A program made the position numbers and the translations under genes. Of a stretch of 64,000 nucleotides of DNA, positions 16,011 through 62,200 are shown one piece after another. The stretch spans positions 23,870,001 to 23,934,000 of the forward strand of contig CM097887.1 in the NCBI GenBank assembly GCA_044892525.1. Direction: 5' to 3'. This stretch comes from Schmidtea polychroa. Taxonomy: Eukaryota. The notes under the pieces were generated by a model. That model made no database searches and was not told where the DNA came from. It saw nothing but the letters and a program-made list of their open reading frames with translations. Position 1 is the first letter of the stretch. The number at the start of each line of letters is the position of its first letter.

Positions 16011-17032
16011 ATTTAACCGAATCTGAATGTCAATATCCGAAAAATTTACTTATGTCGAAGTCTTCGTATATCTATCTAGGCTGTTATCTTAAATTGCTAG
16101 TGACACGACATAATACAATATCAAAATCAGCGACACAATATCGTGACATAAACCAATAAACTCAGTTATTAGCTGAGATAAAATGTGGTCAAAGTTAAAG
16201 TTTAGCTTTAATAATGATGCCGAATAATAAAAGAAAATGTTGTCTTGAGAATAAACTACTGTGAACCTAAGGGTTGTAATATAACCACCATGATTTTTGG
16301 GGGCGTGAAGCGCGTCCTCATAACGTTGTTTCAATCTTCTTCTTACTCTATGTTTGTACATTAATCATTTGTGGGACCAAAGCTGTTAATTACATAAACG
16401 CATTTCTTGATTTGGAGAATTGAGTGTAACCTAGGGCGATTTCTTCTCGAAATGTTGTTCTTGTCATATACACTCTTGTGTGAACCTGTAAAAATAGGCC
16501 TGGTTTAAAATGAATCGTGAACCTTTGTAAGACTCATCGGATTGTCATAAACTAAACTAAAATTTCCCGAACTGCGATCAAATCTAACTCCCTGTGAAAT
16601 GTAAGGATATGATTGATTTTTTTGATAAGATATGGCTGGAAGGTATCGACTTCTCCGGTAAAGATAATATGTAAAGAGGTTTGATTGGAATGATACTACG
16701 ACTGAGGGACGTTGACTAGTTCGTTAATCAAAGTTACTTGGTCAAGATCTTGACTTCATTTTTAAATTTTTAGATTATGTCGGAACCGAATTTGCCAACG
16801 CGCGGCCCGAACTTAAATGAATACATAAGGGTCCTGAAGAAGCGTATCGATAAGCTAGAAAGCACGTGGTTCTCCCCGCCACTTATGAAAGATGCAAATA
16901 AGAAAATCTTACGGCTCGAGCACTGCTGCGACAGTCTGCTCGAGGAGAGTTGATGTCAACGGCTCGCGATCAAGGTCCGGTCGGAGGCCCTCCACCGAGT
17001 CAACTCAGAAGCCGAAATAAAAGGTCGCATCA

Positions 17033-19084: not shown

Positions 19085-20590
19085 TCGCATCAACAAATTC
19101 CCGATAGTAGACAAATTAAATGTATTTCCAATTTATCACCAGATAGGTGAGGCTAGCATCCAGTCCACCTCCAGATGCCACAGTAATGGCCCAGAATCAA
19201 ATCCTATCGTCGCACCCGACATAGTTAGTACGGTACCTATAAAAATGCAGTCTGTCTCCAACAATGTCACGGTACCCACCAGCGTATCTACTAAACCGCA
19301 AGACGTTCCGATACTATCCAATCCCCGAAAAAGAAAGCGTCTGGCCCGAGTGGAATGGTCAAAGAAGCGCCGAGACAAAATCGCCGCGTTAAAGGTCACT
19401 CTGTTCGCTGTCAAGGAGACCAGTAAAAAGCCAGCGCCGCCTAACCTCGTCGCATCGTCTCCAATGACTCTTTATCGAGTAGTTCCGTCATCCGTACCTA
19501 TACTCCTCTGCGATCAGCACCTACAGATGGACATCGACGCCCTAATGGGTCCTAGAAATTTGTTACGATCTGTTATTAGGGGAGAGCGGGTTAAAAAATG
19601 GTGTAAAAAGACCGTTACATAATTTCTGAACAGCCCATTTTTGAAATCGCCAATTATTCGAAGAAATTTTAAAGAAGTTTAGAGGTAATTCAAAAATAAT
19701 ATAAATTTCAGTGTCAGCCAATATTAAATTGATTCTGAATGTTCAAAAAAGGAACTCTCTCATTGGAAAACTTATCCTAGCTCAAAAGGTTAAAAATTTT
19801 ATTGAAAATTTTGTTAATATAAAGTATTGCAAACATTGTAGTAATCTTGAATAATCGTTTTTGTGTTGAGTTGTTTGACTTATTTGAATAAGGACACTGA
19901 GGAGTCAGAAATTAGTACCAATTTGTAATAAAAACCCAACAATATAAATTCAAACAATAATCTTTTAGTAACTTCTGCTTTTCCGAATTCTTTTTCGAGA
20001 TACTTATTACAGTTTTTCAAACCCAAATGTACTTTTTGTACTGTGTTTAATTAACCTAAGGTGTTTAGTTCTTTACCTTGAGTTACTTGATTTTTAGCAG
20101 ACTATCTTTCTTAAATTTATATATTTTTTCAGTGAATTTAAAGTAATCATATGTTAAGAAAAATTTGACAATTATTTCCTTCCAAATGTAAACTAATGTC
20201 TTTGTTTTGATTAATTTATAATTTACCTTTACTTTTCTAATATACTTTTTTGTGAATAGAAAAACTATATAAAAAAAATCTCAAAAGTTTATTTTTATTT
20301 ATATTGACAATTTTTATGAAATAACAAAGCAATATTTTTAATAAGTTTTGATAATTTAAAATTATTTAATAAAATTAATATTCGTTAACAAATTTATATA
20401 TAATATAAATTAAAAATCTTTTTTCTACATTAAAAGCTTTTTCCATTAAAATTTCCGATATGAAATTTTTGGTTGTTTAAACACATAATATGTAACATCC
20501 AAAATTTATTTCCAAACATTTTGTCCCGAATAGAAATTAATTATATTAGTTTTTTTAATAGTATTATCATCTTATTCAAAAGTTTTTCCA

Positions 20591-21118: not shown

Positions 21119-21166
21119 GTTGGTGAGATTTTAATTGAATTTCAATTTATTCAGAAAATTTGATAG

Positions 21167-21410: not shown

Positions 21411-21856
21411 GTAAGTTTTTACTGGATAAAATATTTTTTTATATACTTAAAAAAATAAATTTACGAGTCTTTTTTTATCCATAAATCACTAGGGTAAATT
21501 CACGCTTTCTATAATTACAAATATCATTTTTACAATTTGAATAATTATTTAAGTTGATTATCGATTGATATTGAATTTGTTAATTATTAAATCTTTGAAC
21601 ATAGAATTATTATTGAAAATTATCGATTAATTTCATTTTTCCTTGGATTCATAGAGAATAAAGAAATTTATCGTGATTTTGATATCATTTCTTTGTGTAA
21701 CAAGACATAACCAATTTTTTTTTATGTGGGTAACTAAATCCGATTCTGTTTGCTTTACATAGTTACAAATATTATTATTGCTTGAATTTATTTTTTGAAA
21801 TATTTGCACTTAAAAATCAATAAAAGCACTTTTAAATCAATAAAAATATTATTAAA

Positions 21857-42025: not shown

Positions 42026-42565
42026 TTATAAAATATGAATTCTAATTCCTAATAACCGAAAGCATTTAAATAACTGTTGGGCTAAGCTTCGAGAGTATTA
42101 GAAACCAGGTTAAAGATAAATAAAAAAGGATAGGGTAAATTCCCCGAAAAAATATAAGAACAATTAAAATTAGATAACAATAAAAGAAAATAAGAAAATA
42201 AAGGAAATAATATAAATAATAAATTAATAAAGTTAATAAGATGAAAAGTAAGACGGAAAAGAAAATTACCTAACATCTATGATAGCAGAAGGAAATAGAA
42301 TAATAAATTTAAGGAAAATAAATAAGATACTAAGAATAAAATAGAAATAAAACCATTTGCAAACGTTTATATAAAGTAATTAAAACAAAAGAAAATTATA
42401 TTATAAGCAAATAACAATAAAGTCATAAGAAAAGCGAGGGAAAAATAATAAAAAATAGGAAAATAAATAAAATAGTAATAAAAATAAGAAAAGTCGTAAA
42501 AATCTAACATATTACACTAAAAAACATAAAAATAATAATAAACAATAATATTACACACTAGTCGC

Positions 42566-42689
42566 GTCCTGATTGGACGGAAAATACTATATAAGCAATG
42601 AAGAAAATCTGTAGAGTACCATTTAACCACTATACTCTACAGGTAAAATTACTTTATTTTATTAACCATTTAACCACTATACTCTACAG
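42566..42689 (+). promoter_or_regulatory. Putative Pol II promoter and leader of copy B: inverted CCAAT, TATA, hairpin, splice donor, 24-bp direct repeat
   Basis: GTCCTGATTGGAC 42566-78; TATATAAG 42588-95; 10-bp stem CTGTAGAGTA/TACTCTACAG 42609-42642 then GTAAAA; repeat at 42619-42 and 42666-89. Same order and spacing in copy C. Confidence 0.6.
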
Positions 42690-44816
42690 GACTTTAGAAC
42701 TACGCAACTATTCTACCGAAACTCTACAGAAACTACTCTTAAACAGCTATACTAATATTTCAGGAACTAAACTTTCAGACACTTACCTAATATTCCACAG
42801 GACTTACTTTCTATCGGATTTTTATTGGACTAATAGTGTATCGAAAGAGGACTCATAAAAACCATTTCTAATACTCTCGGAGGAAACAATCATAGTAAGC
42901 AGGATGTTTGTATTTTGTTATTGATATTTTTATATAAATTGGATAATAAAAACTAATTTATTCTTAATAAAAAGTTATAAGCACAAATGGTGCTGACGAC
43001 GGCGTTGTCTGGAGATCGAATATGATGCGGAGGTTCAGATGGATATTCACAGAAAAGTATATGAGAATGATTTGAAACGAGAAAATGGAATCGGGAATTT
43101 TAGTGAAATAGAGTTCACCAGAAGCGTAACATTAATACTATCGTATAGCGTCATGTTCGAGATTCAGACGGCGTGGTCGCCAGGTATATAATTTTATGAT
43201 TTTTAACGAATTTAATTCATTCAAATGCATTATGCCATTTATTAATGTCCATTCGATATACCAATAAAATTGAGATGCGGAGAGATGGAATCGTCCTTCC
43301 TGACGGTCCAGGAGTGGTGGTAGCAATGTATGCCGCTCTTGGGTGGGTCAGGAGGGGTGAGGACATCCAGAGCATGAAGTAAGAGAGATTAGAGGAGTTT
43401 TTCTTTCACCGAGTGAAGTCTGCGATCGTCAGCGAAAGTATTCCGTCAGTAGTGAAGTTGAGATCACGATGTTAGAAACGAAAATAGTAAATCCAACAGA
43501 ATTTTCCGGAGCAATTGAGATGAAGTGAATCTACTCTTTTAGGTCGAAATCATATTCCATTAAGTTCAAATTGGACATAATTACTTCCTCAGCATTCTTT
43601 CGTCGTAATGAGTTGCACAGTCATAGATAATAAACTTCTGTTTTAGCACAAATTCCAAATAGATGCGTATGAACGATCGTTAGGTTTTCTTATAGAGATT
43701 TAGGTCGCCAGAGCGTTAGCGATGAAACCCAGTGCCGATGCACTTTTTAAGTTGGATTGTTGACTTTTAAGCTACTGATAAGCGTCGATTCCCTGAAAAT
43801 AATGTAAACAACATCAGTATTCATTATCAGTTACCTATGGTCAATATGAGCGAAAGCGCTATCAGCATTAGCAGTTGGTTGTCGACAAAAATTTCAGCTA
43901 GATAAAAGTTATCCGATTATGAATCGACCAATATTAGAAAACTGAGGTAACGTAATAATTTCCACCACGATTCATCCATTGAGTGCGTTGACAGCTGCTA
44001 TCATGAATTTACAACACCACAGAGATTAGATGATTAGCTTTAGCTCATTCACAACCTTCCGAATCACACACACACACATACGTAAGGCCTTTACTCATAA
44101 CAACTTTAGTAGATAATGCCATAAGAGTACATACACCCACATGCTGGAGTGAAATTCGTTCTAGAAGATGACAGTAATATAAACGGCAACGTTCTTGTAC
44201 GACGTCATAGATTGCATAATAGCATAGGTATCGCCTGAGCTAGTAGAACGGTATGTAGAAATAAATGAGCAAGCAATACTTTTCGTGCAAAGACATTTTA
44301 CTTGCAAACGGTATTTCACAATACACACGGATAGAGATATTTCCATACAAAAACACCTTAGGTTGTGTCGTTATGACAACGAGTCCAGCGGAGATTTGAA
44401 AATAATAATGTATTAAAACTAAATTGACAATTTAATAAAATTAACAGTGCAAAGAAAAATGTAATCAAGTAACATCACAAACCCGATTAATGACACTATA
44501 TTAACATTGTGAATAGCAACGATATATTTAACCATAATCGACACCCCGAATCTGAGATGAGATTGATTTAGACGAGCAAATTAACATGGTTATTCTCATT
44601 TTCTTTTAAATAAATTACAGAGATTTGTGCGAATTATCATGGATGTTTGGGGCAATGAATGAGTTTATGAACGAATGTTGAAGGTATGTGTGAGATAATT
44701 TCTCTTTTGATTGCATTTTTATATGGAATGAGTGTGGTAAAACTAGCGTCGTGAAAGCACGATCGTCGATCAAACTCGATGTCAAATTGGCCAATAAAAA
44801 TATTTTTAATCTTTAG

Positions 44817-45578
44817 ATGACTACCCCAATCAATACCGAGAAAATTCTTCGTCCTTGTTTTTCCTGCGCGGACAAAAATGCTGACATCGCACAGCTTCAC
44901 CTCTACATCGGGGCACTAAAGAAAAGAATCGATCATTATGAAGGCACGTGGTTCTCCCCGCCACAAATGAAAGAGGAAAAGAGCAAGATACTGCGTCTGG
45001 AGCACTGCCGAGACAGTCTCCTAGAAGAAAGTCGGTGCCAGAGGCTAACCATAAAAGCCCAATCAGAGGCACTCCATAAAGTTTACTCGGAATCAGAAAT
45101 AGCGAAACGAGTTCGCGAGTATCCAGTGCAAGACGGGACTAATGTGTTCCCGATCCACCACCAATCGGCACAGTCAACGACAACTGGTTGTAAGGGGCAT
45201 GGGCCGCATCTGCCGCCAATTCCCGCTCCAATTCTCTCGGGCTATAGACCCATGGCAGGAGGCTCATCGGACCCTATCTTGGCTCCGATTCTAGTACCTC
45301 AACCTATGTCACAGGCTCCAGTAGATACTATCAAGCCACGTCGGAAACGAAATAGATTAACACGTTCGGAGAAAAATCAGAAGCGCAGGAACGCCATGGC
45401 GGCGCTAGAAGCTTCTTTATCCATGGCCCAGTCCACAATCAAGGATATCTCAGCCACCCACGTAATTCCGGCCAAGGAGATATTCAAAGTGGTTCCAGCC
45501 GAGGGCATTAAGTATCTTGTGGATCATAGGTTGCCGGTAGACATAGACGAAGTATTCGCCGATGGAGATGCGTTCTGA
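44817..45578 (+). CDS. ORF253 (copy B): novel protein with CxxC plus coiled coil, Pro-rich linker and basic RRKR helix
   Basis: Intact ORF, colinear with 50254-51015 (~70% identity by eye); many synonymous differences. Confidence 0.9.
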   Translation: MTTPINTEKILRPCFSCADKNADIAQLHLYIGALKKRIDHYEGTWFSPPQMKEEKSKILRLEHCRDSLLEESRCQRLTIKAQSEALHKVYSESEIAKRVREYPVQDGTNVFPIHHQSAQSTTTGCKGHGPHLPPIPAPILSGYRPMAGGSSDPILAPILVPQPMSQAPVDTIKPRRKRNRLTRSEKNQKRRNAMAALEASLSMAQSTIKDISATHVIPAKEIFKVVPAEGIKYLVDHRLPVDIDEVFADGDAF

Positions 45579-47807
45579 AATTCCGACCCGACGATGGGAT
45601 CCATCTCTCATTTCGAAAAGACCTTTAACTAATATCTCTGTATCTAACAATTCGTCGGTATTGTGTAATTAATATTTATTGCATGTTGGTGTACGAATTT
45701 TCGGTCTCGATAATTTTTCTTTGAATATAATAGAAATTTTATTTTTCTTTATTTGTTGGTTGAATGATGAGAATGATGAGTGAAAGGCATAATTGAATTG
45801 TTGGACTGGAACAGTATCCTTGAATGAAGGCCGTCCTCTTGGACCAGGGTCGGGCCGATTGCAAATGTAGGAACGGGTAAGTCCTTCTAAGGCACCATAG
45901 AACCGGAACTGAGAGGGAGTTAGGAGTAGTCTTAAGATAGAGGCTCACCTGCTAGCTTCTTCCGACCCGTGTGGGCAGCACCAACGTAGAACATCACTAC
46001 GGGCTCATACGTGGGAATATTTGCATGACCATGGGGCGTGTACGAGGGAAGCGTCTGAGCGGAATGATGAGAGTTTGTGTGCATATTAGTAATAGTTATC
46101 CATTTTCCCCACGTACACCCAACATAACTAAAAACGATACCGTAGCTTTTGAAAATTTTCATGTTCCCGAAGCACAGAAGGACAAAATCCAACCCATATA
46201 GGGATGCTACTTTTTATTATATTTAAGAATTGCACAAAATGGGAATATGAAAATACGTGAAAATTAAATAGATCACAATTCTTGAAAATTTGGTTGTGAA
46301 GCAGGCTTACAATAAATATCCTCAGAATTAAAAATCCATTTTTTAAATAATAAATTGCTGTTTTTAATTCAAGAACTTCACGTCAAAGCAATCGGTTCAT
46401 TCATAATAAAAAACTGATTATCATACATTATTAATTGAAATAATGATTCAGTGCTCACCTGTCATTGTTAATACTCGAATATATAAATGAATTCAAAACG
46501 CGTAGTAGTAAATTAGTAGTTCGATAAAACAATTAAGAAGTCAGTTATAAAATATATAAATTGAATAAAGTCAAATGAAATTATGCAGTACGATTGATAA
46601 AACCAGCAAGTCTTTAACTCTTAATAAATTTCAATATGCTTCTTTTAAATCATATGAACATACTGGCATACCATACACTGCCAAAGATCGCTGTGCTATG
46701 TTCACAAGATTTAGTGACTGAAAGGAAGGGTCCAATTTTTTTTCTGTGGCAAGATAAGTGGGGGGGGGGGCTAAAGCCCCCCAGCCCCCCCCCCGGCTCC
46801 GCGGTCCCTGTCAATAATAGTATAATAGTATAATTTAGAGATGAGTTAAAAAATATTCAAATTAGCACTTAATATACAATTTCCAAATGTTTGATGCATG
46901 TGAAAATGGAGAAGGATATATAGCGTAAAGTGGATGTCAAATACAATTAATTATATTCGAAACTGTTTTACGGTATCGGTAAAATAGTCAGCTATTAAAA
47001 TAACTAAATACTTTAAAATTTGAAATTATAAATATCGGTTAGATGTGATTCTTTTTTTTCAATAAAACTAGGTAAATTGTCAACTAAGACGACCGATAGA
47101 GCAAAGAAAGCGCAAAAAAGTATAATTTAAATCATTTAAAACACCAAATTAAACAAAAAAAATATAGCAAGAAGAAATAAGTAAAACAGAATTAATGAAA
47201 TTAAAAATCGCAAGTTACATGAAACATAAGCTAAGAAGCATTAAAACAAAGAAAAAATAGCCGAAAAATACACAAATTCAGAAAACACCTCCATATCCAT
47301 GTGTTGGGCCAAGCTCGGAAAGTGTTGAAAGTCAGATCAAGGACGAGGAAAAGGACCATAAGAAGGAATAAAATAAATAAAAAATAAAATCTACGAAAAA
47401 CTACGGGGGATAAATAGGAAGAAATAAATTAAATAACAATAAAGAAATAGAAATAACGAAATAAAAATAATAAAAACTTTTAAGATAGAAAATAGGAAAA
47501 AAGGAAAATCACCAAATAAGCCTAACAATAAGAGAAAAATGAAATAACAAAAGAAAATAAACGAGAAATTAAAAAGATAGAATAAAAATAAAATCGTAAT
47601 CAAATAAATACAATGACTAATTAAAACAAATAAATCATATTAGGTAAAAATAACAATAAATTCGCAGGAAAAACAGGAGAAAAATAATAAAAAAAATAGG
47701 AAAATAAATAAAATAATAATAAAGTAAGAAAAAGTCATAAAAAACCTAATATATTACATTAAAAAACATAGAAATAATAAATAAAAATAACATTACACAC
47801 AAGTCGT

Positions 47808-47934
47808 GTCCTGATTGGACAAGAAATAGTATAAAAGAAATAGGAAATATCTGTAGAGTACCATTTAACCGCTATACTCTACAGGTAAAAAATTTTTATT
47901 TAAAACATTACCATTTAACCGCTATACTCTACAG
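47808..47934 (+). promoter_or_regulatory. Putative promoter and leader of copy C
   Basis: GTCCTGATTGGAC 47808-20; TATAAAAG 47830-37; hairpin 47851-47884 then GTAAAA; 24-bp repeat at 47861-84 and 47911-34. Confidence 0.6.
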
Positions 47935-50253
47935 ACTAGTTTAGCAGCCGATTAATTCACTTCAATAAAACCATTCATCAGAACCTACTGGAGCTTATTC
48001 AGACCCACAGGAACTAAATTTTTACAACCGAGGTATTTCAGTAGAAAAGGACAAAACCACTTTGAAAAACTTTGAATTCAACACTTTCCGAGAGAGTTTC
48101 GGTAAGAGAGATTTGATTTTGTATGATACATATTTAGAATATTATAACGAAATAATAAACGATAACAATTTTATTTAAATAAACATTATTTTACAAAAGA
48201 TGCCTCTTTTTCTATGGAACTGACGACGGTGTCGTCCGAGGATCGAATGTGATGCAATGAATGGAGAGGAATTGCGAGGGGTGTAACGGGGAATGAATAC
48301 TGGAAGCATAATTTGTTAAAGCCAACCGGATAATATCCCTCGGAGTACCGTCTTTATTAACCCAAGGGTTATGGAGTCATATATTGTAATCTGAGGCATC
48401 ATATTCGAGGTTCGGACGTCGCGGTTGTCAGGTAATTTTCTTTGATGTAATCAGACTTTCGTAATATTGAGTAATTATTTTCATTTTGCACATAAGTTAT
48501 TATTATATATTTGAAAATGCGAGAGATAGATTCGTCCCTCCCGACGGTCTAAGAGTGGTGGCAGGAATGTTTTGCCGCTCTTAGGTGGGTCCGGAGGGGT
48601 GAGGACATCCAGTGAACGATATAAATGCAGTAAGGGAGATTCTTCCATCGAGTGACATGTGTGATCGGCATAGAGAATGCTATTCTTGAAGGAGGCGAAA
48701 ATACGGCTTTAGATGCAGATAGTAAATCCACCGAGATTTCGTCCAGAGAAACTATGAAACAAAATCTTCAGCATTATGCGCAATCATATTTCGTTGAGTC
48801 CAAATTCGACCTAGTTACTTCTTAAGCCTTCGAATTTCGGTGGGTTGAATATGAAGGAATCATAGTCTTCAGATACGAACGAAAACTTCCAACGAGATCT
48901 ATGTAGACTGTCACTAGGCTTTCTTTTCGAGATTGTGATCGCTAAGACGTTAACGACTAAACCCATCGTCTGTGTACTTTTGGGGCGAATTGTCGATCTT
49001 AAATCATTGATAAGAGTTTTCTGCTCAAAAATAGAGTAAACAAATCAGGATAACGTATCAATATATTCACCGCCCACACGAGAAACAAATTGCCAGCATT
49101 TATCGGACTATCTTCGAGCAATTTCAGTCAGAGTCGAGCCGATCGTAGTAGAGAATTGATAGTATTTCCGCGAGTAAGATAAGACGGGAATTGCCCAGTG
49201 CATAGGTTGACGATTGTTATCTTAAATAATTGTTGTGAATGAGAAACCCGATAAATTTAATCCGACATGCTTAGGAACATTTCTTGTCTGATCGTTCACT
49301 CACGATAAATCAGTTCTGCTCTCACCATACGATTGATATCACCACCCGTCCAAGTAAAGTAAATACAGATCCATATGGTGTCGAATGGAAGATGCCAACT
49401 TATCTGCACACTAACCTACTCCGCTCAAGGCCATATAGGAATCGATATGTGACGGTAGTACTAAGTCTGATTACCGAATAATGAATCGATGATATACATT
49501 TTCTGAACTAGCGGGGTGAGGCGTAATACAACAAGAGTGGTTACATCATATCAGAATATAAACGTCACAAATTCACCCGACATAACTACAAGTATAAAAT
49601 CGGTCAGCGAATACACACCTACAAATCTGTCTGAGGAGTAACACTAGCACACATAGGGAAAGATGCCGTTATGCAATCACACACAGGCAAGCGTCACTAT
49701 AACGACGGTTATGGCGCGTTGTCTGAAATAATAAAAATATAATTAATCATGCAATTTTAGCAATATATTATCATGAATTTTTGTGACAACAATCGGGCAG
49801 AGATGATAGAAATAGCTTCGAGAGCAATTAAATTAGTTGTACCATAACGTGGCGTACATATAAATTTCCCAACGCACAGTCACGAGGAACTTTCGATCGA
49901 TAATAGTAAGGGATATAGTAACGGGTGTAGAACTAGTAATGACGAGCGAAATAATGTATTTCCCCTGGACATCACCTATTCCGAAATCAAATGCAAAGAC
50001 TAGATCTAATTTAACTCATTCAGCCTTGAACATTCCCCGTTTCCTTTTCCCTTAATTTGCAAAGATTGTTGAGATAAACTCGAATGTTTGTGATTGATGA
50101 ATGGCGAATACCGATAGTTGATATACAAAATTTTCAGAAGATTATTATTTTTATTTTTGGTGGTATGATTTGTAGAATTGCGAGACCGCTTCCAAATTAC
50201 GCATGTTAATCGAACCAATGATACGAACCAGCATGAACTAATTAACTCTTTAG

Positions 50254-51015
50254 ATGTCTACTTCGGCCGGTACTACCAAGGAACTTCGTCCATGCTTCTC
50301 CTGCGCGGATAAGAATGCCGACATCGCGCAGCTCCATCTATATATCGGGGCTCTAAAGAAACGAATTGACCTTTACGAAGGAACGTGGTTCTCCCCGCCA
50401 CAAATGAAGGAGGAGAGGAGCAAAATCCTGCGACTAGAGCATTGCAGGGATAGCCTGCTGGAGGAAAGTCTTTGCCAACGGCTCACAATCAAAGCCCAGT
50501 CGGAAGCCCTCCACAAGGTCTATACGGAGGCAGAACTGGCTAAGCGGGTACGGGAATTTCCCGTCTTAGATGGGACCAATGTCTTCCCACTCCACCACCA
50601 TTCAACCCAAACATCCACATCCAACTGTCAGGGGTATGGCTCACACCTGCCGCCCATCCCAGCTCCCGTACTGTCCGGTTATCAGCCGTTGGCAGGTGGT
50701 CCTTTCGATCCTATCTTGGCTCCAATTCTAGTGACTCCTGTCGCCACATCCGTCGCGGATAACCATCAGCCATCCCGCAAACGAAGAAGGCCAACCAGAG
50801 CCGAGAAAAATCAGAAACGCCGAGATGCAATGGCGGCACTCGAGGCGTCGTTAACTGCAGCCCAAACCACCCTTAAGGGAATTTCGTCTACGCATTCCAT
50901 CCCCTCGAAAGAAGTATCCCGAGTAATCCCTGCAGAAGGCGTCAAATTTGTCTCAGACCATAGACTTCCTGTGGACATCGACGCGATGATCGCTGATGGA
51001 GAAGGTTTCGCGTAA
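50254..51015 (+). CDS. ORF253 (copy C)
   Basis: Intact 253-aa ORF; ATG directly after TTTAG as in copy B. Confidence 0.9.
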   Translation: MSTSAGTTKELRPCFSCADKNADIAQLHLYIGALKKRIDLYEGTWFSPPQMKEERSKILRLEHCRDSLLEESLCQRLTIKAQSEALHKVYTEAELAKRVREFPVLDGTNVFPLHHHSTQTSTSNCQGYGSHLPPIPAPVLSGYQPLAGGPFDPILAPILVTPVATSVADNHQPSRKRRRPTRAEKNQKRRDAMAALEASLTAAQTTLKGISSTHSIPSKEVSRVIPAEGVKFVSDHRLPVDIDAMIADGEGFA

Positions 51016-51775
51016 CGTGATTTACTATCGAACGAGTTTATCCCTCGATTCTCAGATCAACGGTTGCGTAATGGAACGACAGTATTGTGTGTTTTAGTAG
51101 TGATCTGTAACATATTTGTTTGGTGATGATAATGTACCCCTTTGTTTTGTTGCGTCAATATATATTTTGTTGTGTGTCTAACTTCTTGGTGGTGAAGATT
51201 ATTAAAGCACATGAGTATGCACTCGGGGTGACTGAAGGGATGATGTGAAAACAGAGCGATTTAAGCAAAGGGTCGTCCCTTTGGACCAGGGTCGGACCGA
51301 GAAACGCGAAAAATGATGGGTAAGACCTTCTAAGGCACCTTGGAACCGAACCGCGAGGGGGCTAGCAGTAGTCCTAAGGCAGGGGCTCACCTGTTAGTCA
51401 ACTCCGACCCGTGTGGGCAGCACCAACGTGGGGACATCACCACGGGCTCACATGAGGGAATATGAGTAAAATCACGTGGAATATGCGGGGGAAAAGTCCG
51501 GAGCCGAACGAACACGAATGATAGGTCAGGTGATGAATTTTCCTTATCTCCCCTCATATGCCAACACATGGAATAAGGATGGTGTAAAAAGGCGATCATT
51601 CAATCAATCAGGATTGAAAAGAAAAGAAATAATTTTAAAACAAATTAGTAAATTAAAACATAAATAAATAGACCAATCAAAATGATTTGAATTTGAAAGA
51701 TAAAAATAATTAAAAACACTAGATTTGAATTTGAAAGATAAAAATAATTAAAAACACTAGATGATTCCTGATTAG

Positions 51776-54100
51776 TGTTGGTTACCTGGGGATGAGTTTT
51801 CCTCAAGTATCCGCCACGACCTAGCAGTAATCTCCCACATGTGTGCCCATGATGATAAATCACGTTGGTGCTGCGCACATGGGTAGGAACTTACGAACAG
51901 GTGAGCCCCTGCGTTAGGACTACTATTCGTAACATTCACAGTACTGAAGGACTTGCATCTTAATTTTCTAAGAACCTGTCTCTGGTCCAAGGAGACAGTT
52001 ACGGAAATTCGAAGTTCATCCACCGATTAGAATCCTAAGGGAGAGCCTTTCTCAATATCGGATTTCCTAAGATAACTTGACAGCGCAACAACTGATTACA
52101 AAATATCTATTAATTAACACACAAGTAACTCAAATAAGTATATAAAACACGCATTAATTACATGACACTCAGAATCAAAGGTGGTCAGTTTGATTCGACA
52201 GAAAATGTTGGTTTCGCAACTACGTATATATACAGGATGGTTCTCTACAGATCAATTCTCCTTCAGCGAGCATCGCATCGATGTCGGTTTGCTTATGTGG
52301 GTTGACTGGTGTTTCGATTAGCGATGGTGGAACTACGCGATACGTTGCTATGGAGACAGATTCGACAGGATATTCACTAGGCGGCATCGTATTCATTGAT
52401 TGAGTTGTATATAAGGTAGCTTTGAGAGCGGCCATCTCATCTCGGCGTCTTTTTGTGCGCTCTGCTCGAGTCGGCGTTTCCTCTTTCTGGGACTTGGTTG
52501 TATCGAAGTCTCTGGTTTAACTATTGAAGTAGCAGAGGTTGTCTCTTTAGGGAGGAGGTTCGATGACTCACTGACCTACTGTACACCCTTTAAGAAAGGA
52601 ACGACGACAGGTGGCAGATCAGGACCGTGACCGTAGCAGTTGGAAGCTGGCCTTGTTATTACTTCGTCCGCTCGATGATGTATAGGAAATACATTCAATT
52701 TATCTTTTACCGAGTACTCTGACTCGTTGTTTTAACTCAGTTTCTGTTGGGCCGAGATTTGATCGACAAACGGGGTTTAACCACTTACATTACTAACGAA
52801 ATCGTTAACCCGAGTGAAAATTAATTTAAATGAGGTTCGAATAAAAGTAGTAATTTAATTTAGATGGTATAAGTATACCTTACATATTAAAATGAATATT
52901 AGTTTCATGAAAAATAAGTTTAAATGAAGTTTGAGTCAACATTAAGATTAATTCGAAGAGGAGTAAATTAATTACCGGTTGGTAGACAAAAGAAAACCTT
53001 CCCTCTCAAAAAATTGACTTACGGTAAATATTAATTAAAATAGCATTTCATCCAGGAATTGGCATAGTAAATTTTAATTAAAATGGTATTTCAAATTCGA
53101 GAATTGGATTATGTAACGTTAGGAACGCTTAGAATCGATGTTTATCTGTAACGAAGATGGTTAATAAATTAAATTTCTGATGAACGCAGAGTGACATGAC
53201 AGGATGTTTAATATCAGTGTGGAATATCGTCTCGCCAAATCTAATCTGTGCGGATTTCTCTGGGGTCGTCATTACCTGATTCTAAACATTACTGAAAATT
53301 GTTTATGCTTTCCATATCCGGCTTGGCTGCGTTCAACTCGATAAGTTATCATTTGGTAACAAAATGACTGGATCAGTGTTTCTACTGATTCACAGAATTA
53401 TGGCGAGTGTACTTAACCTTTGATGAATTTACGCTTGTCGAAAAATGAAATAAATTTTGCATGGGAAATGTGGAAATTAGTGGTTTTGCAGAGTCACCTA
53501 GATTGACATTCGAAACCTTGCTTCTGGTTAAAAATCTCATATCAACTACTCTGAAGGTACGATTTCTGAGTGTAAGTATCTATATCTTGAGAATATTCGA
53601 TATATTCATTTTATTCTCTCACTGGACATATTAAATCGACAAAGTGGTAGCCGTCATTCAATTTCTACTGGGTGATTATGACAAGAAATTTCTGCATTGC
53701 GAGTGGATTTTTCGAACCGTTCTACGCTAGATGACCAAAAGATAACATATGGATGAGAAAATCTATCTCCTTAGCTACTCGCTCTAGTCTACATTGTCAC
53801 TCTCAGATTTCATTGCCTGTGAGGCAGGAAAGACAGACAGCACGCACCCTACCCACGCCACCGACTTCACATGCCAGTCTCTTCCAGTGAGGCAGATAGA
53901 TGGAACATCCTACCCCCGTCCATACTACATAAACCTCTACATGTGCAACTCATGCACGCCCATGTCAATGCATGTGTGCACGATAGCAATTTTTCTTTTA
54001 TCAAACATATTGAATGTAATGCAGTGATTCACATTAGAGCAACTGTTGTCGACAACGTTTGGTATCGACAATTGTTGCGCTGTTAACATTTGGTGTTAAG
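51776..54100 (-). mobile_element. Copy D of the ORF253 family (inverted, ORF 5'-truncated)
   Basis: Terminus TGTTGG at 51776; conserved 3' block at 51825-52000; ORF remnant 52220-52735 (KLNVFPIHH...GHGPDLPP...RKRKR...DEMAALKATL). Far end not found. Confidence 0.75.
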
Positions 54101-54494
54101 CAATCCTGTGAGGCTAATATTTTAATTGTCCAGCACTACCCTTTAACGATTTGGGGAAATTTATAGACACACTCCGGGGTTCGAATTCAGTACACATCTG
54201 AGAAATTTCGCGACATGTAACATTGCTTTACTAATTTAAAAGACCTCACCACCCATTGAAAGTTTTGTTAGAGAATCTTTTTTAACTTAAGAAAATGATT
54301 AAGTCTCAGTTAATTAGGATACGAGAAAGTTTTTATTTAGTGAAATTTAAAACGATGCTCCGACTTTAATTAAAAGGTTTCTTCAGGATTCGGCCCATTA
54401 TATAGTGCTTATTAGATCATTTATGGTACATGAATAAATGTAATTGTTTATTTCATTTTCACCTTGAAGTAAAACCATCATTTTTTATTCTGTC

Positions 54495-54572
54495 CGTTTT
54501 TTTATTTGGGGGGGGGCAGACTTGCGTTTGGGGGGGCCGGGCCCTCCTGGGCCCCCCGACGGTACGGGCCTG
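54495..54572. mobile_element. Orphan terminus of a hAT-like element
   Basis: G-run/C-run subterminal structure ending ...GGTACGGGCCTG (CAGGCCCGTAC TIR); partner end not found. Confidence 0.55.
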
Positions 54573-56247
54573 ATTAAAAGAATAACAATAAAAAACTAAA
54601 TATAATGAAAAAAAGACGCAAAATACAACACCACTTAATCCTTATTGGTCGAAATCAAGACAATAATTATATAAATACGAGCATCTCTGATTGATTCTTC
54701 AATGTTTTTCCTAACAAATCTATAGGTATTTCTATAGGTATTTCATTAGTATTAGCTCAATAGGACTCCAGTTAATTAACCGATTCCATTTTCGAGGACT
54801 TCACAGTAGAACGATTTGATTGATCATTGGAGGGTGAACCGTTTGGAAAATGTAAAATTTTCTATTATTTTTTATTTTTACTAATTTGTATGTGTTTATT
54901 ATCTGTAATTTCCTTTTCCTCACATTCATATATGATATTAGATAATAAATAATGGTAATAGCGATGACTTTCAATTACATCAACAAATGATATTTAATAA
55001 TAGTGACAGTAATTTCAATAATTTTCCAATAGCTCATTTCGAATGCATATTGTTATTATGATATGCTATTATCATGGATGTCCCCAGATTGGAATATGTT
55101 CGTGAACCGTTGGCATGGACAGCGGATGTTGACCAGTTTGGTACATCAGTTTAAGGTGTAAAATGAGGAGTAATTTATAATAGAAAGGTGTGGATTTTAT
55201 TGAGTGCCAAAAGCAGTTTTTACGAATGGTAATCCAACAGAAATGAATTGGAAGGTTTTCACGGTGATAGAGATCGATCGATAGAAAGGACTTGTGAGAC
55301 GGATGAGCTGATCGGTGATAAAATTGGCCTAGGTGGGCGTAATAATCTATAGAAATTGTTCAATTTGAAATACAGTGAATATAACCTGTACGTAACCTGC
55401 CGGATTTCCTGAAACACAAAGCATAGTCAATAACTTAATGACTATCGCTATAAGCGTTGCACAAATGAATTTTCTAATAATTGTGGTTATCATTAACCTT
55501 ACGATCTACTAGTAAAATTACCGCAAATGATAAATATTGATATATTCGTTACAATATATTGTGATTGTATAAGTAGTGGGGACAACTAGTTCCCGGAGTT
55601 TTTTTTTGTCGTCATCCCCCGGTTAAATCAACTCTTTCCTTTCCCACTTCTTCAGATGGTTGGGTAATTTGAATGATGATAATCTATAGAATATTTTTCA
55701 ACAGACTCACCCTCCGAAATTTACCAGAACTGTCCTTAAACACCTTCGTTGTAGAAATGGCAGAACCAACGCTACCGAGATTGGGACTCAATCCGTGCTT
55801 CTCATGCGCGGATAAAAACGCAGCTGTAAAACAATTCCAGTCGGAAGTTGGGGCCGTAAAGAAACGCATCGACTTCTTAGAAGGAACCTGGTTCGCCCCG
55901 CACAAATAAAGGAGGCGAATCGAAAAATCTTGAGGTTGGAAAACTATAAGGACAGCATCCTAGAAGAGAATCTCAATATGAGGCTCACAATCAAATCTCA
56001 ATCTGAGGCCCTACATCGTATCTATTCTGAATCCGAATTGCGGAAACGTGTAGCGGAGTGCTCCATCTCCGATCGAGACAATATTTTCCCAGTTCATCGT
56101 CTTCGTGACGATCGTGAGTTAGCTGCAAAGACGTCTTGTCTTAATCATGTGGTGGAATCTCCTCCTCTAACCACACCAGATGTCCTGTGTATCGGAACAA
56201 GTATGGTTCCGTCCAAAGTGCCAGCATCAACCTATGATAACAACGAA
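54573..56247 (+). mobile_element. Copy E of the ORF253 family (frameshifted, 3' part replaced by the non-LTR element)
   Basis: A-rich leader, ATTGG (~54645), TATATAAA (~54668), tandem TCTATAGGTATT. ORF from ATG 55757: NPCFSCADKNAA...KKRIDFLEGTWFAP...LRLENYKDS...KSQSEALHRIYSESELRKRV. Confidence 0.75.
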
Positions 56248-59200
56248 AATTTTTGACAAGATATTCGAGATTCCCGCCGTTAACCAGTGCTTAGCAGAAT
56301 TGCCCCTATATAGCATTCAAGAGCACTGGGCAGAAATAACTAAGATTATTTCATTTGAATACTTCTTAATGTTTTTTTCAGGAAGCAATGAGACTACGAT
56401 TCAGGAACTGGAGGAACATTGGGAGAATATTGCCTCGATAGTCAAGAATTATGACTCAGTAACCCATGATTATCTATATCAAAGTGATGCATACTCTTAC
56501 AAAAAAAATGAAAATGCACTACTAGTTTTTTCAAAACTTTCCGAAATCTATAAAAAAAAGGTAATTAATAATCAGAATTACAATACTAATAATTTTAAAA
56601 ACTCTGTTTCGAAAAATGGGATTTTTTCAAATCTAAGAATTTATGGAGATGAAAAATTCTCTTTTAAAAGTATTAATAATATTAAAAATTTCGGTTTTAA
56701 AAAAAATAGAAAATCTTCAAAACCAATTTTTTACAAAAATAAAAATTTTTCAAATTGGAAAAAAAATTTAGGAAATAATAAAAATGATAAAGTTTTTTAT
56801 AAAAATGATGTTTTTTGTAAAAAATCTATTGAAAGTGAAAATGTAAAAAATAAGAGAAAGGAAACGTCTAATATGTTTAAAGAATCATTTGAAAAACCCG
56901 AAATTTTTAATAATAAAATTTTAAATAACTTTATAAATACCAATTTTAAAAAAAAAAAACATCTTTTTAATTTAAAAAATAATAATGAAAAACACCTTTT
57001 TAATAACAATAATTTAAATTATTTTTTTAAAAATAAAAATGAAAAATTCTTAAAAGATTCTGATATTAATTTGTTTAAATATAATAATAAGATCACAACC
57101 TATGATAACAACGAATCTTACCCTTTTTTTTGATAATAAAAGTACTATCCCAATAAAGATTAATGAAGCCCCAATCATAAATGCAAAAAAAGATAATATT
57201 ATACTCAATCATATAGAAAACTTAAAAGATATTGGGGACACCATTTTCAACAATATTAGGGATCAATTCGTTATTATAGGGAAAATTGATGTACTACCAC
57301 TCCCGAAAATTTTTAGAGAAGCATTCTCCACTATAAATGCAAAATACGAACAACTAATAGCAATTATAAGTAAAGGTAAGACTAAATTAGGAAAGAGTAT
57401 TTTTAATATGAAGCTGATCCCCAAAGTTATTCCAAATAAAAATAATAGAATACCTAAACTAAATATTGATTATATAAATACCTTTATTAAAAAACTTTTC
57501 ATAGATATTCATACAGTATTAAAGGGGATAGATAAGAAAACCAACTATCATATTATTAAAGACTTTTTCTATATTTTAGTATTAAAATTTAATAAACTTT
57601 GTCAATTTTTATTTTTTAAGAATAATGGTAAAGTATTTAATGAAACACCGCAGCCATTCCCTCTTGTCCATAATAATAAATCTGCCAATAAAAAAAAAAG
57701 AAGGTCACCTTCAGTGACGATAAGTCTCATAACTCTAGATACTTCAACTCTGCCAATAGATACGCTAAGCTTATTGACCTAAATGATTCTAAACCTAACA
57801 AGCATCTTCCACAAAAAACTAATGAGATGCCAACAACCCCTTCAGCAACTTCATCAACACCCAAAAACAGAAACACCTCTAAAAAACCGCATTTTTCTAA
57901 ACCAATCCCGAACAACACTCCGCCTGAATCCATTAGACCAAACTCTGAATTACTCAAAAAAGTGATAAGACCAAATATTAAAAATGTATTAGGGACATTT
58001 AATATTACGGAAAAAATTTGTGAATCTATCCTCCCCCAACCGCTTATAAAAAAACCTGAACTTAAATCAATTCCAAAATGTGACAATAACAAAGTACCGT
58101 CACCTTCGCCAAAAAAAACAGATAATTGCGACCTAGATAACCATTCGAACTCTGACCTTTTTGCCGATACCTCCTTAGTAATTAAGCATACTAATACGGA
58201 TATAGATAATATCATCTTACACAACAGCTCCTCCGATAAGTCATTCAATGAATCAATCATCGTACGTAAATCTGCTAAACCTTCTCCTCTTGATAACACA
58301 TCTAAAAACGATAATACCTCCTTCTCTGTAAGCGTTGAAAACCCTAAGTCATTGTTCCCATTATGTGCTTCCATAATCCAAAATGACGATGTAACCAATA
58401 CCCCTAAAAAATCCCCTACCAAGTCCAGCAGTGAGCAATCTATCTACGCTATTACTTCCACCCCAATTGCCTCAGCTATTAATGAACAAAAATCCTTTCA
58501 AAAATCCTTACAAATTAAAGGAACTACTATCCAAACTAACCACCCAAAAACTTTTAATATAGCAAAGACAACTAAGATAAGAACTTCTAAAAACTTTAAA
58601 ACTCATGATAAGAATAATAAAGCTCTCTATTTTTTTGATAGTAGGGGAAAAATGAACTGTAGAGCAGGATTACATAATCCAACATTCTGTGGATCTATAG
58701 GTGTATATTCGAGAGAAATGTTGATTGCACATGCTAAGGATGTCCATGGAATTGATTTCAATTATGATTCGACCATTGACTGCTATCAATGTAAACCAAA
58801 GCAAGGAGGGGATAGATCCACAATGAACGTAATAAATTTTAAAAATTTGTACAAACACATCAAAGATTTCCAGCACCATTGTGAGATTGACAGAGCCTAC
58901 CAAAAGGATGTTACCGTAGAAATAACCCCCAAGCATGAAATTGCATGCCACATCCTAAGTAAGAACATAAAAAATAAGTGCTACACCACCTTCAACCATG
59001 AAATCCCAATTGAAAGTATAATGGCGCATATGAAAAAACTGCACAAAAAACTAATCTTTAACATAGATAAGAATATCTATTGCTACTGCGGGGAATGGCT
59101 GCCTATTCATCAAATTAAAAACCATATAAATGATTTTCATTTAAATAACCTAATTGAACTCAATAACGAAGTAGGTGAGGGAAATAGCAATGGGAATAGA

Positions 59201-62200
59201 GATTTTTTTAAAAATATTCTTGCAACTAATGAGAATATTCTAACACCAAATAATAATGAAGTTATAGGTAGAGAAATCCCGGATACCATTCTTTTTTCAA
59301 ATAATTTGGAAAAAGAATCAACATGATGGTCCCAGCACACAATCAAGGCTTTCATCTTCTCATTCGCAATAAGAAACTCCACCATCTTCGTCGATCCATA
59401 TATAGGTAACTCGCTAATCCAGCACAACTTCCGTACTTTCTTCGAATCCTTTCCTTTTAGAGACTTCGCAGAATGGAATGAGATTGTCATGCCAATGTAT
59501 AATGGTAAAAACAACTGGTTTCTGTTCTTTCTTGACAAACGCCGTAAACTCGCTCTTATAATAGATCCTACAGTTAATGATTCTTACTCTTCTTACAACG
59601 CTCTTGGTAATAACATCCTCACCACTATCCTTGACTTGCAAAAAATCGTTACGCCTGTTGAAATTAAACTAGAGCAAATCCAATATCCACGATGTATTAG
59701 TCCAGATGAATCAGCCTTCTTTGTGTGCCACATGACTGAATGTTTAATTTTAAATAGAAAATTAACTTCTCCCAATATTCCGAATATGATAGAAAGAATT
59801 AAGATAATATTGACAAAATTATGTAATACTAGACTGCCTACTGATGATGTAAGAAAATATCGGACATTTATCAGTAGTCTTATAATTGATCTTAATATAG
59901 ACGCAACCAACTGTGATAATGTACTAGGAGAAATAGAAAAAATAAACGCTAATATCAATGAGAAAAAATATTTAATTAAAAAACCCGCAGATATAGTCCA
60001 TAAAAAACAAAAAAATAATAATGAATTAGTTATGATAAAAAGAAATAGGTACAAGTTTAACCCCAAGGAGGAGATTGCGAGAATTTTGAACAACGAGGTT
60101 AATTTTCAAAAGCCCATTATGGCAAATCTCCTTAAGCTTTTTGCAGGTGAAATAGCTAAGTGTCATCCTGAATCAATTAAATATATTCCAAATTATCCTG
60201 AGAACCACTCGTCTACCCCATTCGATATTGACGAAATTAAATATATTTTCAAACAACTGGACAATACTGCTCCAGGAATGGATTTGATTACCCTTGCTAA
60301 TTGGAGAAAATTTTCTCCTGACTACCAACTAATACTGGCTATATGTAACAATATCATACGTAATGCCAACTGCCCTACAAACTGGAAAACGTTCAGAACA
60401 AAATTCATCCTGAAACCTGGAAAAAGTGAAACAAGTTTTGAAGCAAGCTCATGGAGACCAATTTCCATAATGAATACTGCCTACAGAGTATTTTCATCAC
60501 TCTTAAACAACAGACTTCTTGGATGGATTAAGGAAGGAAACCTTATATCTAGAAATCAGAAAGCCATAGGAGCCTCTGACGGTTGTGCAGAGCATAACCT
60601 TATCCAACAACTAATTAAAGACTTCGCCTTTAGAACCAAGAGTGATCTGCACATTGTCTGGCTCGACATTTCAGACGCATTCGGCTCACTGCCTCATAAC
60701 CTAATTTGGCACACTCTATCTGCAATGGGCCTTGACTCCAAATCTATTAAACTTATCAAAAATATGTATGATGGCGTAAATACTATCTTTGATTGTGAAG
60801 GAGAAAGATCCCCTGAGGTGCCCATAGTTAGGGGAGTTAAACAGGGATGCCCCCTATCTATGACTCTTTTCTGTCTGGCCATAGACTTCATACTTAAAAA
60901 CATCCTCATCAGTCACCCTTTCATCTTTAATAACATGAACATAGGTATACTAGCATATGCCGATGACATTGTGCTAGTATCTAACTCTTACGCCTCTATC
61001 AATTCTGCCCTGCTAGAAACTACCAGGCTTGCTTCGTTAGCCAACCTCAGATTTAAACCATCGAAATCTGGTTATTTTCATATTGATCATGAGCTGAACT
61101 TTTTTCCGATAAAGCTATATGGGGAAATCATTCCAAAAATAGATGATTCCAATTTATATAGATACTTGGGAATTGATTTTACCCACAAAAAAAGACACAA
61201 CATAGACGACAGACTTGAAACTGCCGTTAAGGATACTAGAAAGATTCTCGAATCCCACCTCCATCCATCACAGAAAATAAATGCCTTCAAAATCTTCATC
61301 CATTCTCGTCTTATTTTTCCTTTTCGTAATTGTGAGATCCTTCATGGTGTCCTTGATTCTCATAAGGACAAAATCATCAAAAATAGAGAGCCCCAAAAAG
61401 GTTTTGACCAGAAGATTCGTAAGCTTATCAAGACATCTTTAGGAGATAAACTACTCCAAATTAACAATCATTTCATATACGCATCGGTGAAAATGGGAGG
61501 TATTGGACTAACCTCAGCCATTGATGAATACCTCATACAAAGTATTGTACACCTTGCTCGGGCACTAAATTCTTCTGATACAGGCTTCCAAAATCTAGTA
61601 CTAATGGAACTTGCATTATCACGGGGTAATGGCAATATAGAGGCTGCCTTATCATGGATCAATGGTGATACTACAAAAAACTTTGGTTATAAATCTTTCT
61701 TTTCTAAATTCAGGAAATCCGTCGACCTCTTAAGATTAAAATATGGAATTCATGTCAAAATTGTCTTACTAGATGACATGTACCAGCTGGAAATAAAATA
61801 CAAAGAAAGGATCAATTATTTCTTCTCCACAAATCTCAACAACACATCATCTGAACTCCACTCAATAATAGGCTTAATTCATGCAGAAAAATGGATCAAT
61901 CTCAAATGCCAAGGGCATATTGCTAAATCCATATGCAATAGTAGCGTGGCTGACTACCTGGTTAAAACTGACACTCTAACCGATGCTCAATACCTATTCC
62001 TTCTAAGAGCAAGGAACAATCTCCTTAAACTAAACTATGCACCACATAGATTAAAGGCTAAAAAAATACTCTATGTAGGCAATGCAATTCCCACCCAGAG
62101 ACACAGGCGCATGTATTCAATCACTGCCCTGCAAAAATAAATGCAAGAAGAAACAAGCATACACGTGTACTAGAAGCGGTATGTCAATCTCTTCTTAACT

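What the first reader, a model, noticed from the sequence alone, without database searches (positions are those of the whole stretch)
42075..51566. Candidate new mobile element: 4.05-4.27 kb TGTTGG...CCAACA insertions with 4-bp TSDs, a conserved gene and no mobilisation enzyme
Seen: copy B (42075-46124, TSD TAAC) and copy C (47302-51566, TSD CATG) are independent, full-length, colinear insertions. The ends share only 6-7 bp of inverted symmetry, there is no terminal direct repeat, and no RT, integrase or transposase is recognisable. Further partial copies (A, D, E, F) make six in 64 kb, and copy D also ends in TGTTGG. Known: TG...CA ends with a 4-bp TSD are the footprint of Gypsy- or Ginger-type integrases, and giant Gypsy elements with multi-kb LTRs are reported in planarians (Burro). 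Inference: these are either giant solo LTRs that carry their own gene (analogous to MMTV sag in the LTR) or non-autonomous cargo elements moved in trans by an integrase.
Basis: partly seen in the sequence, partly recalled or inferred. Interest (0 to 1): 0.92.

Follow-up and report, generated by a model that had tools for sequence, protein, structure and literature searches.

The report
Giant solo LTRs carrying a gene
Two intact 4-kb insertions and three damaged relatives have the end signals of retrotransposon long terminal repeats and carry one strongly conserved gene of unknown function; they are most likely giant "solo LTRs" of flatworm Gypsy-type elements, not a new class of mobile DNA.

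Summary
B (42075-46124, TSD TAAC) and C (47302-51566, TSD CATG) are colinear units. A repeat at 369-702 is a paralogous empty site for C, with one CATR and no insert. B and C are only about 59% identical, yet both keep an intact 253-codon ORF under strong purifying selection (pN 0.15, synonymous sites saturated). I found five copies, not six: A, D and E are damaged, and E is inserted into D. No copy touches gag, pol or integrase.

The 7-bp ends fit the published LTR integrase-recognition consensus TGTTRNR...YNYAACA. The TSDs are 4 bp with no sequence preference. The conserved blocks read like an LTR: A-rich start, CCAAT and TATA boxes, leader hairpin with splice donor, AATAAA, and a structured domain beside the 3' end. 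Ginger-type transposons fail on TIR length and target.

Best reading (0.6): solo LTRs of several old lineages of giant Gypsy-like elements, each carrying a spliced accessory gene. Main rival (0.22): a non-autonomous unit moved in trans. The deciding test, paired copies around gag-pol, needs the whole assembly, which these tools could not reach. The ORF's only relatives are chimeric gene predictions held only as unnamed UniParc sequences.

The parts
42075..46124 (+). Copy B, intact unit of 4050 bp, ends TGTTGGG...CCCAACA
42071..42074 (.). Left target-site duplication of B (TAAC); the right copy is at 46125-46128
47302..51566 (+). Copy C, intact unit of 4265 bp, ends TGTTGGG...GCCAACA
47298..47301 (.). 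Left target-site duplication of C (CATG); the right copy is at 51567-51570
369..702 (-). Paralogous empty site: a copy of the repeat into which C inserted, with a single CATR and no insert
44817..45578 (+). Conserved ORF of B (253 aa). A stop codon and an acceptor-like TTTAG sit directly before the ATG.
50254..51015 (+). Conserved ORF of C (253 aa), 74% identical to that of B, with the same acceptor-like TTTAG before the ATG
42566..42595 (+). Promoter-like block of B: inverted CCAAT box (GTCCTGATTGGAC) and TATATAAG. The equivalent block in C is at 47808-47837.
42609..42644 (+). Leader hairpin of B (10-bp stem, 14-nt loop) ending in CAG|GT, a splice-donor-like site. The equivalent in C is at 47851-47886. 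The 24-nt motif recurs at 42666-42689 and 47911-47934.
42966..42971 (+). AATAAA aligned between B and C (48178-48183 in C), followed by a conserved, moderately G+T-rich block
45910..46014 (+). Conserved two-hairpin GC-rich domain near the 3' end of B. The equivalents are C 51352-51457 (+) and D 51832-51937 (-).
51776..52744 (-). Copy D, the 3' part only (B coordinates about 3017 to the end), ending in CCAACA. It is cut off by the insertion of E. ORF remnant: 1 stop and at least 1 frameshift.
52745..56178 (+). Copy E, 5' end TGTTGGGCC, nested in D. Its ORF starts 3012 nt from the end. The ORF remnant has at least 1 frameshift and is followed by unrelated sequence.
16777..19941 (+). Copy A, from the ORF start to the 3' terminus CCCAACA; 5' end not fixed (candidates 13627 and 14181). 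The ORF has 1 nested insertion and at least 1 stop.
17032..19085 (.). Foldback/TIR element nested in copy A (a neighbour, not part of the family)
56180..62140 (+). Sequence that follows copy E: three unassigned ORFs and an R2/LINE-type reverse transcriptase ORF (59489-62140). This is a non-LTR element, not the internal part of the family.

Best explanation
B and C are solo LTRs, and A, D and E are damaged ones. They belong to several anciently diverged lineages of giant Gypsy-like (Burro-type) LTR retrotransposons of a flatworm. Shown: each unit is a discrete insertion with LTR-type 7-bp inverted ends and a 4-bp TSD, and it carries one gene kept by purifying selection. Inferred: a full element was inserted by its own integrase, which recognises the TGTTGGG/CCCAACA ends and makes the 4-bp duplication. 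Recombination between its two 4-kb LTRs then removed the interior and left one LTR between the original TSDs. Inferred from conserved signals: within the LTR, the A-rich first 0.5 kb with CCAAT and TATA acts as U3. Transcription starts at the leader hairpin. AATAAA about 350 nt further on marks the R/U5 border. The long remainder holds an intron-like stretch, the ORF and a structured domain next to the 3' end, which would serve reverse-transcription priming and integrase binding. The ORF would be expressed from a spliced RNA that joins the leader donor to the acceptor abutting the ATG. Its product (helical hairpin, disordered proline-rich linker, arginine-rich helix) probably binds nucleic acid as an accessory or Gag-like factor. 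That last step is speculation.
For: The termini fit the published LTR short-inverted-repeat consensus TGTTRNR...YNYAACA, about 7 bp (PMC3601003), at 3 of 3 observed 5' ends; at 3' ends A and B fit fully and C and D fit in six of seven positions. The 4-bp TSDs have unrelated sequences, and C has an empty site. Unequal recombination leaves solo LTRs with TSDs (PMC7251063). The conserved blocks come in LTR order: CCAAT/TATA, leader hairpin, aligned AATAAA with a G+T-enriched stretch, and a 3' structured domain that folds alike in B, C and D, with 9 of 57 pairs compensated. The layout is kept in four lineages that share almost no other DNA. The ORF shows pN 0.15 against pS 0.83, with differences at codon positions 56/30/151, and it is the only frame-specific conservation. 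E is nested in D. The size fits planarian Gypsy elements, whose interior is up to 25 kb and whose total exceeds 30 kb (PMC6431247). Relatives of the ORF are scattered next to many unrelated genes in deposited gene predictions.
Against: No copy in 64 kb is paired or lies next to gag, pol or integrase, and no PBS-like or PPT-like flank was seen. If the TATA and AATAAA are the LTR's own signals, the ORF lies in a U5 of about 3.1 kb, which I know from no LTR. The U3-like part holds about fifteen AATAAA motifs that a genomic RNA would have to read through. There is no AATAAA after the ORF in B. Likeness to Burro or any catalogued LTR could not be tested. The organism is not identified: the best named relative of a host kinase is from Schmidtea mediterranea at only 39% identity.
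Confidence: 0.6

Rival explanations
1. The 4-kb unit is a complete non-autonomous element. It carries its own gene and LTR-like ends and is moved as a whole, in trans, by an integrase or another DDE transposase encoded elsewhere (Ginger-like, or a Gypsy integrase).
For: All boundaries seen (three 5' ends, four 3' ends) lack an adjoining retrotransposon interior. The window has five copies and no gag-pol. Intron-like structure is retained inside the unit. Ginger elements share TGTNR ends and 4-bp TSDs (PMC2836005).
Against: The TIR is only 6-7 bp against 40-270 bp in Ginger. The TSDs TAAC and CATG are neither CCGG/CCGT nor within RTATAY. No such transposase gene is in the window. The conserved promoter, poly(A) and 3' structured signals are what an LTR needs and have no evident role in cut-and-paste transposition. 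No case is known to me of an integrase moving a unit without terminal repeats.
Confidence: 0.22
2. The unit is the integrated form of an unknown small virus-like or retro-element that replicates by a route other than LTR-type reverse transcription. The ORF would be its structural (Gag-like) protein.
For: The ORF is 50-53% GC against 31-36% for host exons. The protein has no family. Its relatives carry an arginine-rich stretch and a PPPY motif. There is a conserved RNA-like structure.
Against: No replication enzyme and no terminal redundancy are present. The ends and TSDs are those of integrase-made LTR ends, so a retrotransposon integrase is needed anyway.
Confidence: 0.08
3. These are not mobile elements but segmental duplicates of a host gene region.
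For: The copies cluster within 14 kb.
Against: The boundaries are exact, with different 4-bp TSDs, and C has an empty site. One copy is nested in another in the opposite orientation. Relatives are dispersed next to unrelated genes.
Confidence: 0.02

Closest known systems
LTRs of giant planarian Gypsy elements (Burro, also catalogued as GYPSM1)
   Same: Flatworm-like AT-rich genome. Multi-kb LTR size is implied by a total above 30 kb with an interior up to 25 kb. These elements are abundant and carry accessory ORFs (PMC6431247). The Gypsy-type TGTNR ends and 4-bp TSD also agree.
   Different: No sequence comparison was possible. The accessory ORFs described for Burro lie in the interior. A selected gene inside the LTR is not mentioned in the papers I could read.
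Ogre LTR retrotransposons of legumes
   Same: Very long LTRs of 1.9-6.5 kb (PMC6431247).
   Different: Ogre is a plant lineage. Its extra ORFs are internal, upstream of gag, not in the LTR.
MMTV sag, an ORF in the 3' LTR
   Same: A protein-coding gene inside an LTR (PMC2191060).
   Different: sag lies in U3 (my own knowledge). Here the ORF lies downstream of the conserved TATA and AATAAA. There is no sequence or fold likeness. The LTR here is about three times longer (own knowledge of MMTV LTR size).
Ginger1 and Ginger2 DNA transposons
   Same: TGTNR termini and 4-bp TSDs made by a Gypsy-like integrase (PMC2836005).
   Different: Ginger TIRs are 40-270 bp and the targets are CCGG/CCGT or RTATAY. 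Here the inverted ends are 6-7 bp and the targets are TAAC and CATG.
Non-autonomous LTR elements (LARD, TRIM; own knowledge)
   Same: No polymerase or integrase of their own.
   Different: Those have two terminal direct repeats. B and C have none.

Membership tests
LTR of an LTR retrotransposon (present as solo LTR) | Short inverted terminal repeats fitting TGTTRNR...YNYAACA, about 7 bp | tested here: met
   B TGTTGGG/CCCAACA, C TGTTGGG/GCCAACA, E 5' TGTTGGG, A 3' CCCAACA, D 3' ACCAACA. The consensus is from PMC3601003. The first 3' position deviates in C and D.
LTR of an LTR retrotransposon (present as solo LTR) | Short TSD (4-6 bp) without sequence specificity | tested here: met
   TAAC and CATG, and an empty site for C.
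LTR of an LTR retrotransposon (present as solo LTR) | U3-R-U5 signals: TATA-type promoter, AATAAA, G+T-rich stretch after it | tested here: inconclusive
   The CCAAT and TATA boxes and an aligned AATAAA are conserved between B and C. G+T is 0.58-0.63 after the AATAAA against 0.46-0.47 for the element as a whole. Only two sequences and no RNA data were available, and these signals would imply a U5 of about 3.1 kb.
LTR of an LTR retrotransposon (present as solo LTR) | The same sequence occurs as two direct copies enclosing gag-pol, with PBS and PPT | not testable with these tools
   The window has no paired copy and no gag, pol or integrase domain. The assembly and related DNA could not be reached.
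Burro / GYPSM1 giant Gypsy family | Sequence similarity of the unit to the catalogued LTR | not testable with these tools
   No Repbase or Dfam library and no planarian assembly were at hand. Only the size is compatible.
Ginger1/Ginger2 DNA transposons (non-autonomous member) | TIRs of 40-270 bp | tested here: not met
   Inverted symmetry stops after 6-7 bp. The criterion is from PMC2836005.
Ginger1/Ginger2 DNA transposons (non-autonomous member) | Target CCGG/CCGT (Ginger1) or RTATAY (Ginger2) | tested here: not met
   TAAC and CATG. Only two sites were available.
Ginger1/Ginger2 DNA transposons (non-autonomous member) | TGTNR termini and 4-bp TSD | tested here: met
   TGTTG ends and 4-bp TSDs. 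These features are shared with Gypsy LTRs, so they do not discriminate.
LARD/TRIM-type non-autonomous LTR element | Two terminal direct repeats within one element | tested here: not met
   Self-comparison of B and C finds no terminal direct repeat.
MMTV sag-type LTR gene | ORF in U3 of the LTR; homology to the superantigen | tested here: not met
   The ORF lies 2.2 kb downstream of the conserved TATA. There is no Pfam, PDB-sequence or fold match. The resemblance is in kind only.

The most novel reading that the evidence does not exclude
The 4-kb unit is not the LTR of anything. It would be a self-contained mobile gene cassette with retroviral-type att ends, its own promoter, an intron and one selected gene, inserted in trans by a Gypsy- or Ginger-type integrase. 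That would be a new kind of non-autonomous element.
Probability: 0.2. Interest if true: 0.85.

Novelty: new variant of a known kind. Interest (0 to 1): 0.55.

Why it matters
If these are LTRs, they show that giant flatworm retrotransposons keep a protein-coding, apparently spliced gene inside the LTR, and have done so across lineages old enough to saturate synonymous sites. Every solo LTR left in the genome would then be a potential free-standing promoter-plus-gene unit. That bears on how such elements regulate themselves and on chimeric transcripts with host genes; the ORF's only relatives are gene predictions fused to unrelated host domains. It also warns annotators that these ORFs contaminate flatworm gene sets. 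If instead the units move on their own, they would be a new class of integrase-dependent cargo element.

Tried and rejected
- **Word-indexed protein search with ORF C:** no hit.
- **Exact look-ups of ORF C, the RT ORF, P0001 and P0002 for genomic context:** none on record.
- **Profile search of 1.84 billion representatives:** 13 hits. The informative ones are chimeric predictions, and P0012 is a low-complexity artefact. All 10 hits looked up (P0001-P0007, P0009, P0011, P0013), and the hits, are known only from UniParc/MetaClust without DNA.
- **Scans of metagenome and viral contigs with ORF peptides and with the conserved 3' motif:** nothing.
- **Rfam, at gathering and at E-value thresholds, and tRNA search:** nothing relevant, so no ribozyme or retrozyme reading.
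- **AlphaFold model:** low confidence (pLDDT 58). Fold and PDB sequence searches gave only generic helical hairpins.
- **The RT ORF downstream of copy E:** I considered it as the element's pol and rejected it, because it is R2/LINE-type and the ORF next to E is unrelated to the family.
- **Other coding regions in B and C:** tblastx shows none.
- **Grohme et al. 2018, the Burro description:** not held in the library.
- **A sixth copy:** not found.
- **The 5' end of A:** could not be fixed.
Full report
**1. The observation**

The stated coordinates are exact.
- B (42075-46124) starts TGTTGGG, ends CCCAACA and is flanked by TAAC on both sides.
- C (47302-51566) starts TGTTGGG, ends GCCAACA and is flanked by CATG on both sides.
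- The two units are colinear from end to end (nhmmer E 1e-118 to 1e-158). A global alignment gives only about 59% identity, concentrated in blocks. They are therefore members of old, separate lineages, not recent copies of one family.
- Neither unit has a terminal direct repeat.
- A strong new control is a paralogous empty site. Window 369-702, read on the minus strand, is a roughly 75% relative of the DNA on both sides of C. The left flank aligns up to ...TATCCATG and the right flank starts CATGGAAT. The paralog reads straight through with a single CATR and no 4.27-kb insert. C is thus a discrete insertion that duplicated 4 bp.

**2. Copies in the window**

I find five copies, not six.
- D is cut off because E (from 52745, plus strand, starting TGTTGGGCC) is inserted into it.
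- E runs 3.4 kb and is then followed by unrelated sequence that includes an R2/LINE-type reverse transcriptase.
- A ends in CCCAACA at 19941 and holds a nested foldback element. Its 5' end could not be fixed; the candidates are 13627 and 14181.
D has one stop, at least one frameshift and truncation by E. E has at least one frameshift and truncation.
- A and E share with B and C only the termini, the ORF and the layout. The ORF starts 2.7-3.0 kb from the 5' end in B, C and E. The distance from the ATG to the 3' end is about 1.1 kb in A once its nested element is discounted, and about 1.3 kb in B and C.

**3. The gene**

- Each intact unit has one ORF of 253 codons (44817-45578 and 50254-51015).
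- Between B and C the protein is 74% identical.
- Differences fall 56/30/151 on codon positions 1/2/3. pN is 0.15, while pS is 0.83, which is saturated.
- tblastx finds frame-specific conservation nowhere else in the units.
- This is therefore a real gene kept by purifying selection over a long time.
- The ORF is 50-53% GC in a window whose host exons and LINE are 31-36% GC.
- It has no Pfam family, no PDB relative and no close homolog.
- The AlphaFold model is weak overall (pLDDT 58). It shows a confident helical hairpin (residues 17-89), a disordered proline-rich linker and a basic helix (182-211). Fold search returns only generic hairpins.
- A profile search of 1.84 billion proteins gave 13 hits. 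The informative ones are gene predictions in which an ORF-like N-terminal domain, an arginine-rich stretch and a PPPY motif are fused to unrelated host domains: glycine-cleavage P protein, CRAL/TRIO, SNF transporter, ABC, ribosomal L21, subtilase, phosphatase, actin and hAT.
- All 10 hits looked up are known only from UniParc. They show that the ORF belongs to a dispersed repeat in at least one other genome. I infer that genome to be a flatworm's; this is not shown.

**4. Conserved non-coding blocks**

Between B and C, despite saturated synonymous sites, four things are conserved.
- **Promoter and leader.** About 490-570 nt from the 5' end lie an inverted CCAAT box and a TATA box. They are followed by a 10-bp hairpin whose 3' arm ends in CAG|GTAAA.
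- **Poly(A)-like signal.** An aligned AATAAA lies about 350 nt further on, followed by a conserved stretch with G+T of 0.58-0.63 against 0.46-0.47 for the element as a whole.
- **Acceptor at the ORF.** An acceptor-like YAG lies within 3 nt of the ATG. It is also present in A and E.
- **Structured 3' domain.** A GC-rich domain 60-170 nt from the 3' end folds into the same two hairpins in B, C and D taken separately. In the alignment fold, 9 of 57 pairs are kept through changes on both sides. With three sequences this is suggestive, not proof.

Rfam has no match.

**5. What it is**

- The ends fit the published consensus of LTR integrase-recognition repeats, TGTTRNR...YNYAACA, conserved for about 7 bp (PMC3601003).
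- A 4-bp TSD of arbitrary sequence is the Gypsy-type footprint.
- Ginger transposons share TGTNR ends and 4-bp TSDs. However, they have 40-270-bp TIRs and insert at CCGG/CCGT or RTATAY (PMC2836005), and both of these features fail here.
- LARD/TRIM-type elements need two terminal repeats, which are absent.
- The order of conserved blocks is that of U3-R-U5: A-rich start, promoter, leader, AATAAA, then a structured domain beside the 3' end.
- Unequal recombination between LTRs leaves solo LTRs with TSDs, and the ratio of solo LTRs to complete elements has been reported to correlate with LTR length (PMC7251063).
- Giant planarian Gypsy elements have interiors up to 25 kb and totals above 30 kb, which implies multi-kb LTRs. 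They are present in thousands of copies and carry accessory ORFs (PMC6431247).
- I therefore rate 'solo LTRs of giant Gypsy-like elements that carry an accessory gene' at 0.6.

**6. What speaks against it**

- No copy is paired or adjoins gag, pol or integrase. No such domain exists in any ORF of 85 aa or more in the window.
- The flanks of the 3' ends of A and D show no primer-binding-site-like start.
- If the TATA and AATAAA are the LTR's own, the ORF sits in a U5 of about 3.1 kb, for which I know no precedent.
- About fifteen AATAAA motifs lie in the U3-like part. In B, none follows the ORF.
- The rival reading, a self-contained cassette moved in trans, stays at about 0.2. A virus-like element of unknown replication is at about 0.08. 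Plain segmental duplication is contradicted by the empty site.

**7. Limits**

- The decisive comparison needs the whole assembly and the repeat libraries, and neither could be reached.
- The organism is not identified. The best named relative of the window's CDK-like kinase is a Schmidtea mediterranea protein at 39% identity. That fits a flatworm but proves nothing.

Noticed in passing
42619-42642, 42666-42689; 47861-47884, 47911-47934: A 24-nt motif occurs twice per element, 47-50 nt apart. Its single variable base is A in both copies of B and G in both copies of C. That is a concerted change within each element, and it is unexplained.
   Followed up: partly
39612-42025 (-): hAT-like transposase gene in three ORF pieces (zf-C17orf113, DUF4371, hAT dimerisation domain). 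Its start lies 50 bp from the left end of B. One distant ORF relative (P0013) is a prediction fused to the same kind of hAT protein.
   Followed up: partly
56180-62140 (+): Non-LTR retrotransposon: the RT ORF at 59489-62140 is closest to R2 and L1 proteins in the PDB. It is preceded by three ORFs with no family.
   Followed up: partly
17032-19085: Foldback/TIR element with roughly 200-bp inverted arms (88% identical) and an internal tandem array (17778-18944), nested in copy A.
   Followed up: no
4443-5591 (+); 9871-12972 (+); 21135-21455 (+): Host genes: an intronless CDK-like kinase ORF; a 1033-codon N/S-rich ORF with tandem peptide repeats; and a RabGAP-TBC exon. Copy A probably sits in an intron of the TBC gene, on the same strand.
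   Followed up: partly
23774-24550 (-); 34696-35070 (-): Fragments of a MULE transposase and of a pogo-type DDE_1 transposase.
   Followed up: no
369-702 (-); 47049-47301 and 51567-51700 (+): An A-rich repeat family of unknown type. One copy hosts the C insertion and D ends about 75 bp beyond its last aligned base; the other copy serves as the empty site.
   Followed up: partly
46760-46800: A run of G followed by runs of C forms a GC-only near-palindrome in otherwise AT-rich DNA.
   Followed up: no
44817-45578, 50254-51015: The element ORFs are 50-53% GC (GC3 0.50-0.54), while host exons and the LINE RT in the same window are 31-36% GC.
   Followed up: partly
55816-56253 (+); P0003; P0007: Sub-threshold Pfam hits of the ORF family to mRNA capping enzyme domains (E 1.6e-4 and 0.008) and, for the arginine-rich stretch, to REV (E 0.0013). 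These are probably compositional.
   Followed up: no
   Followed up: no
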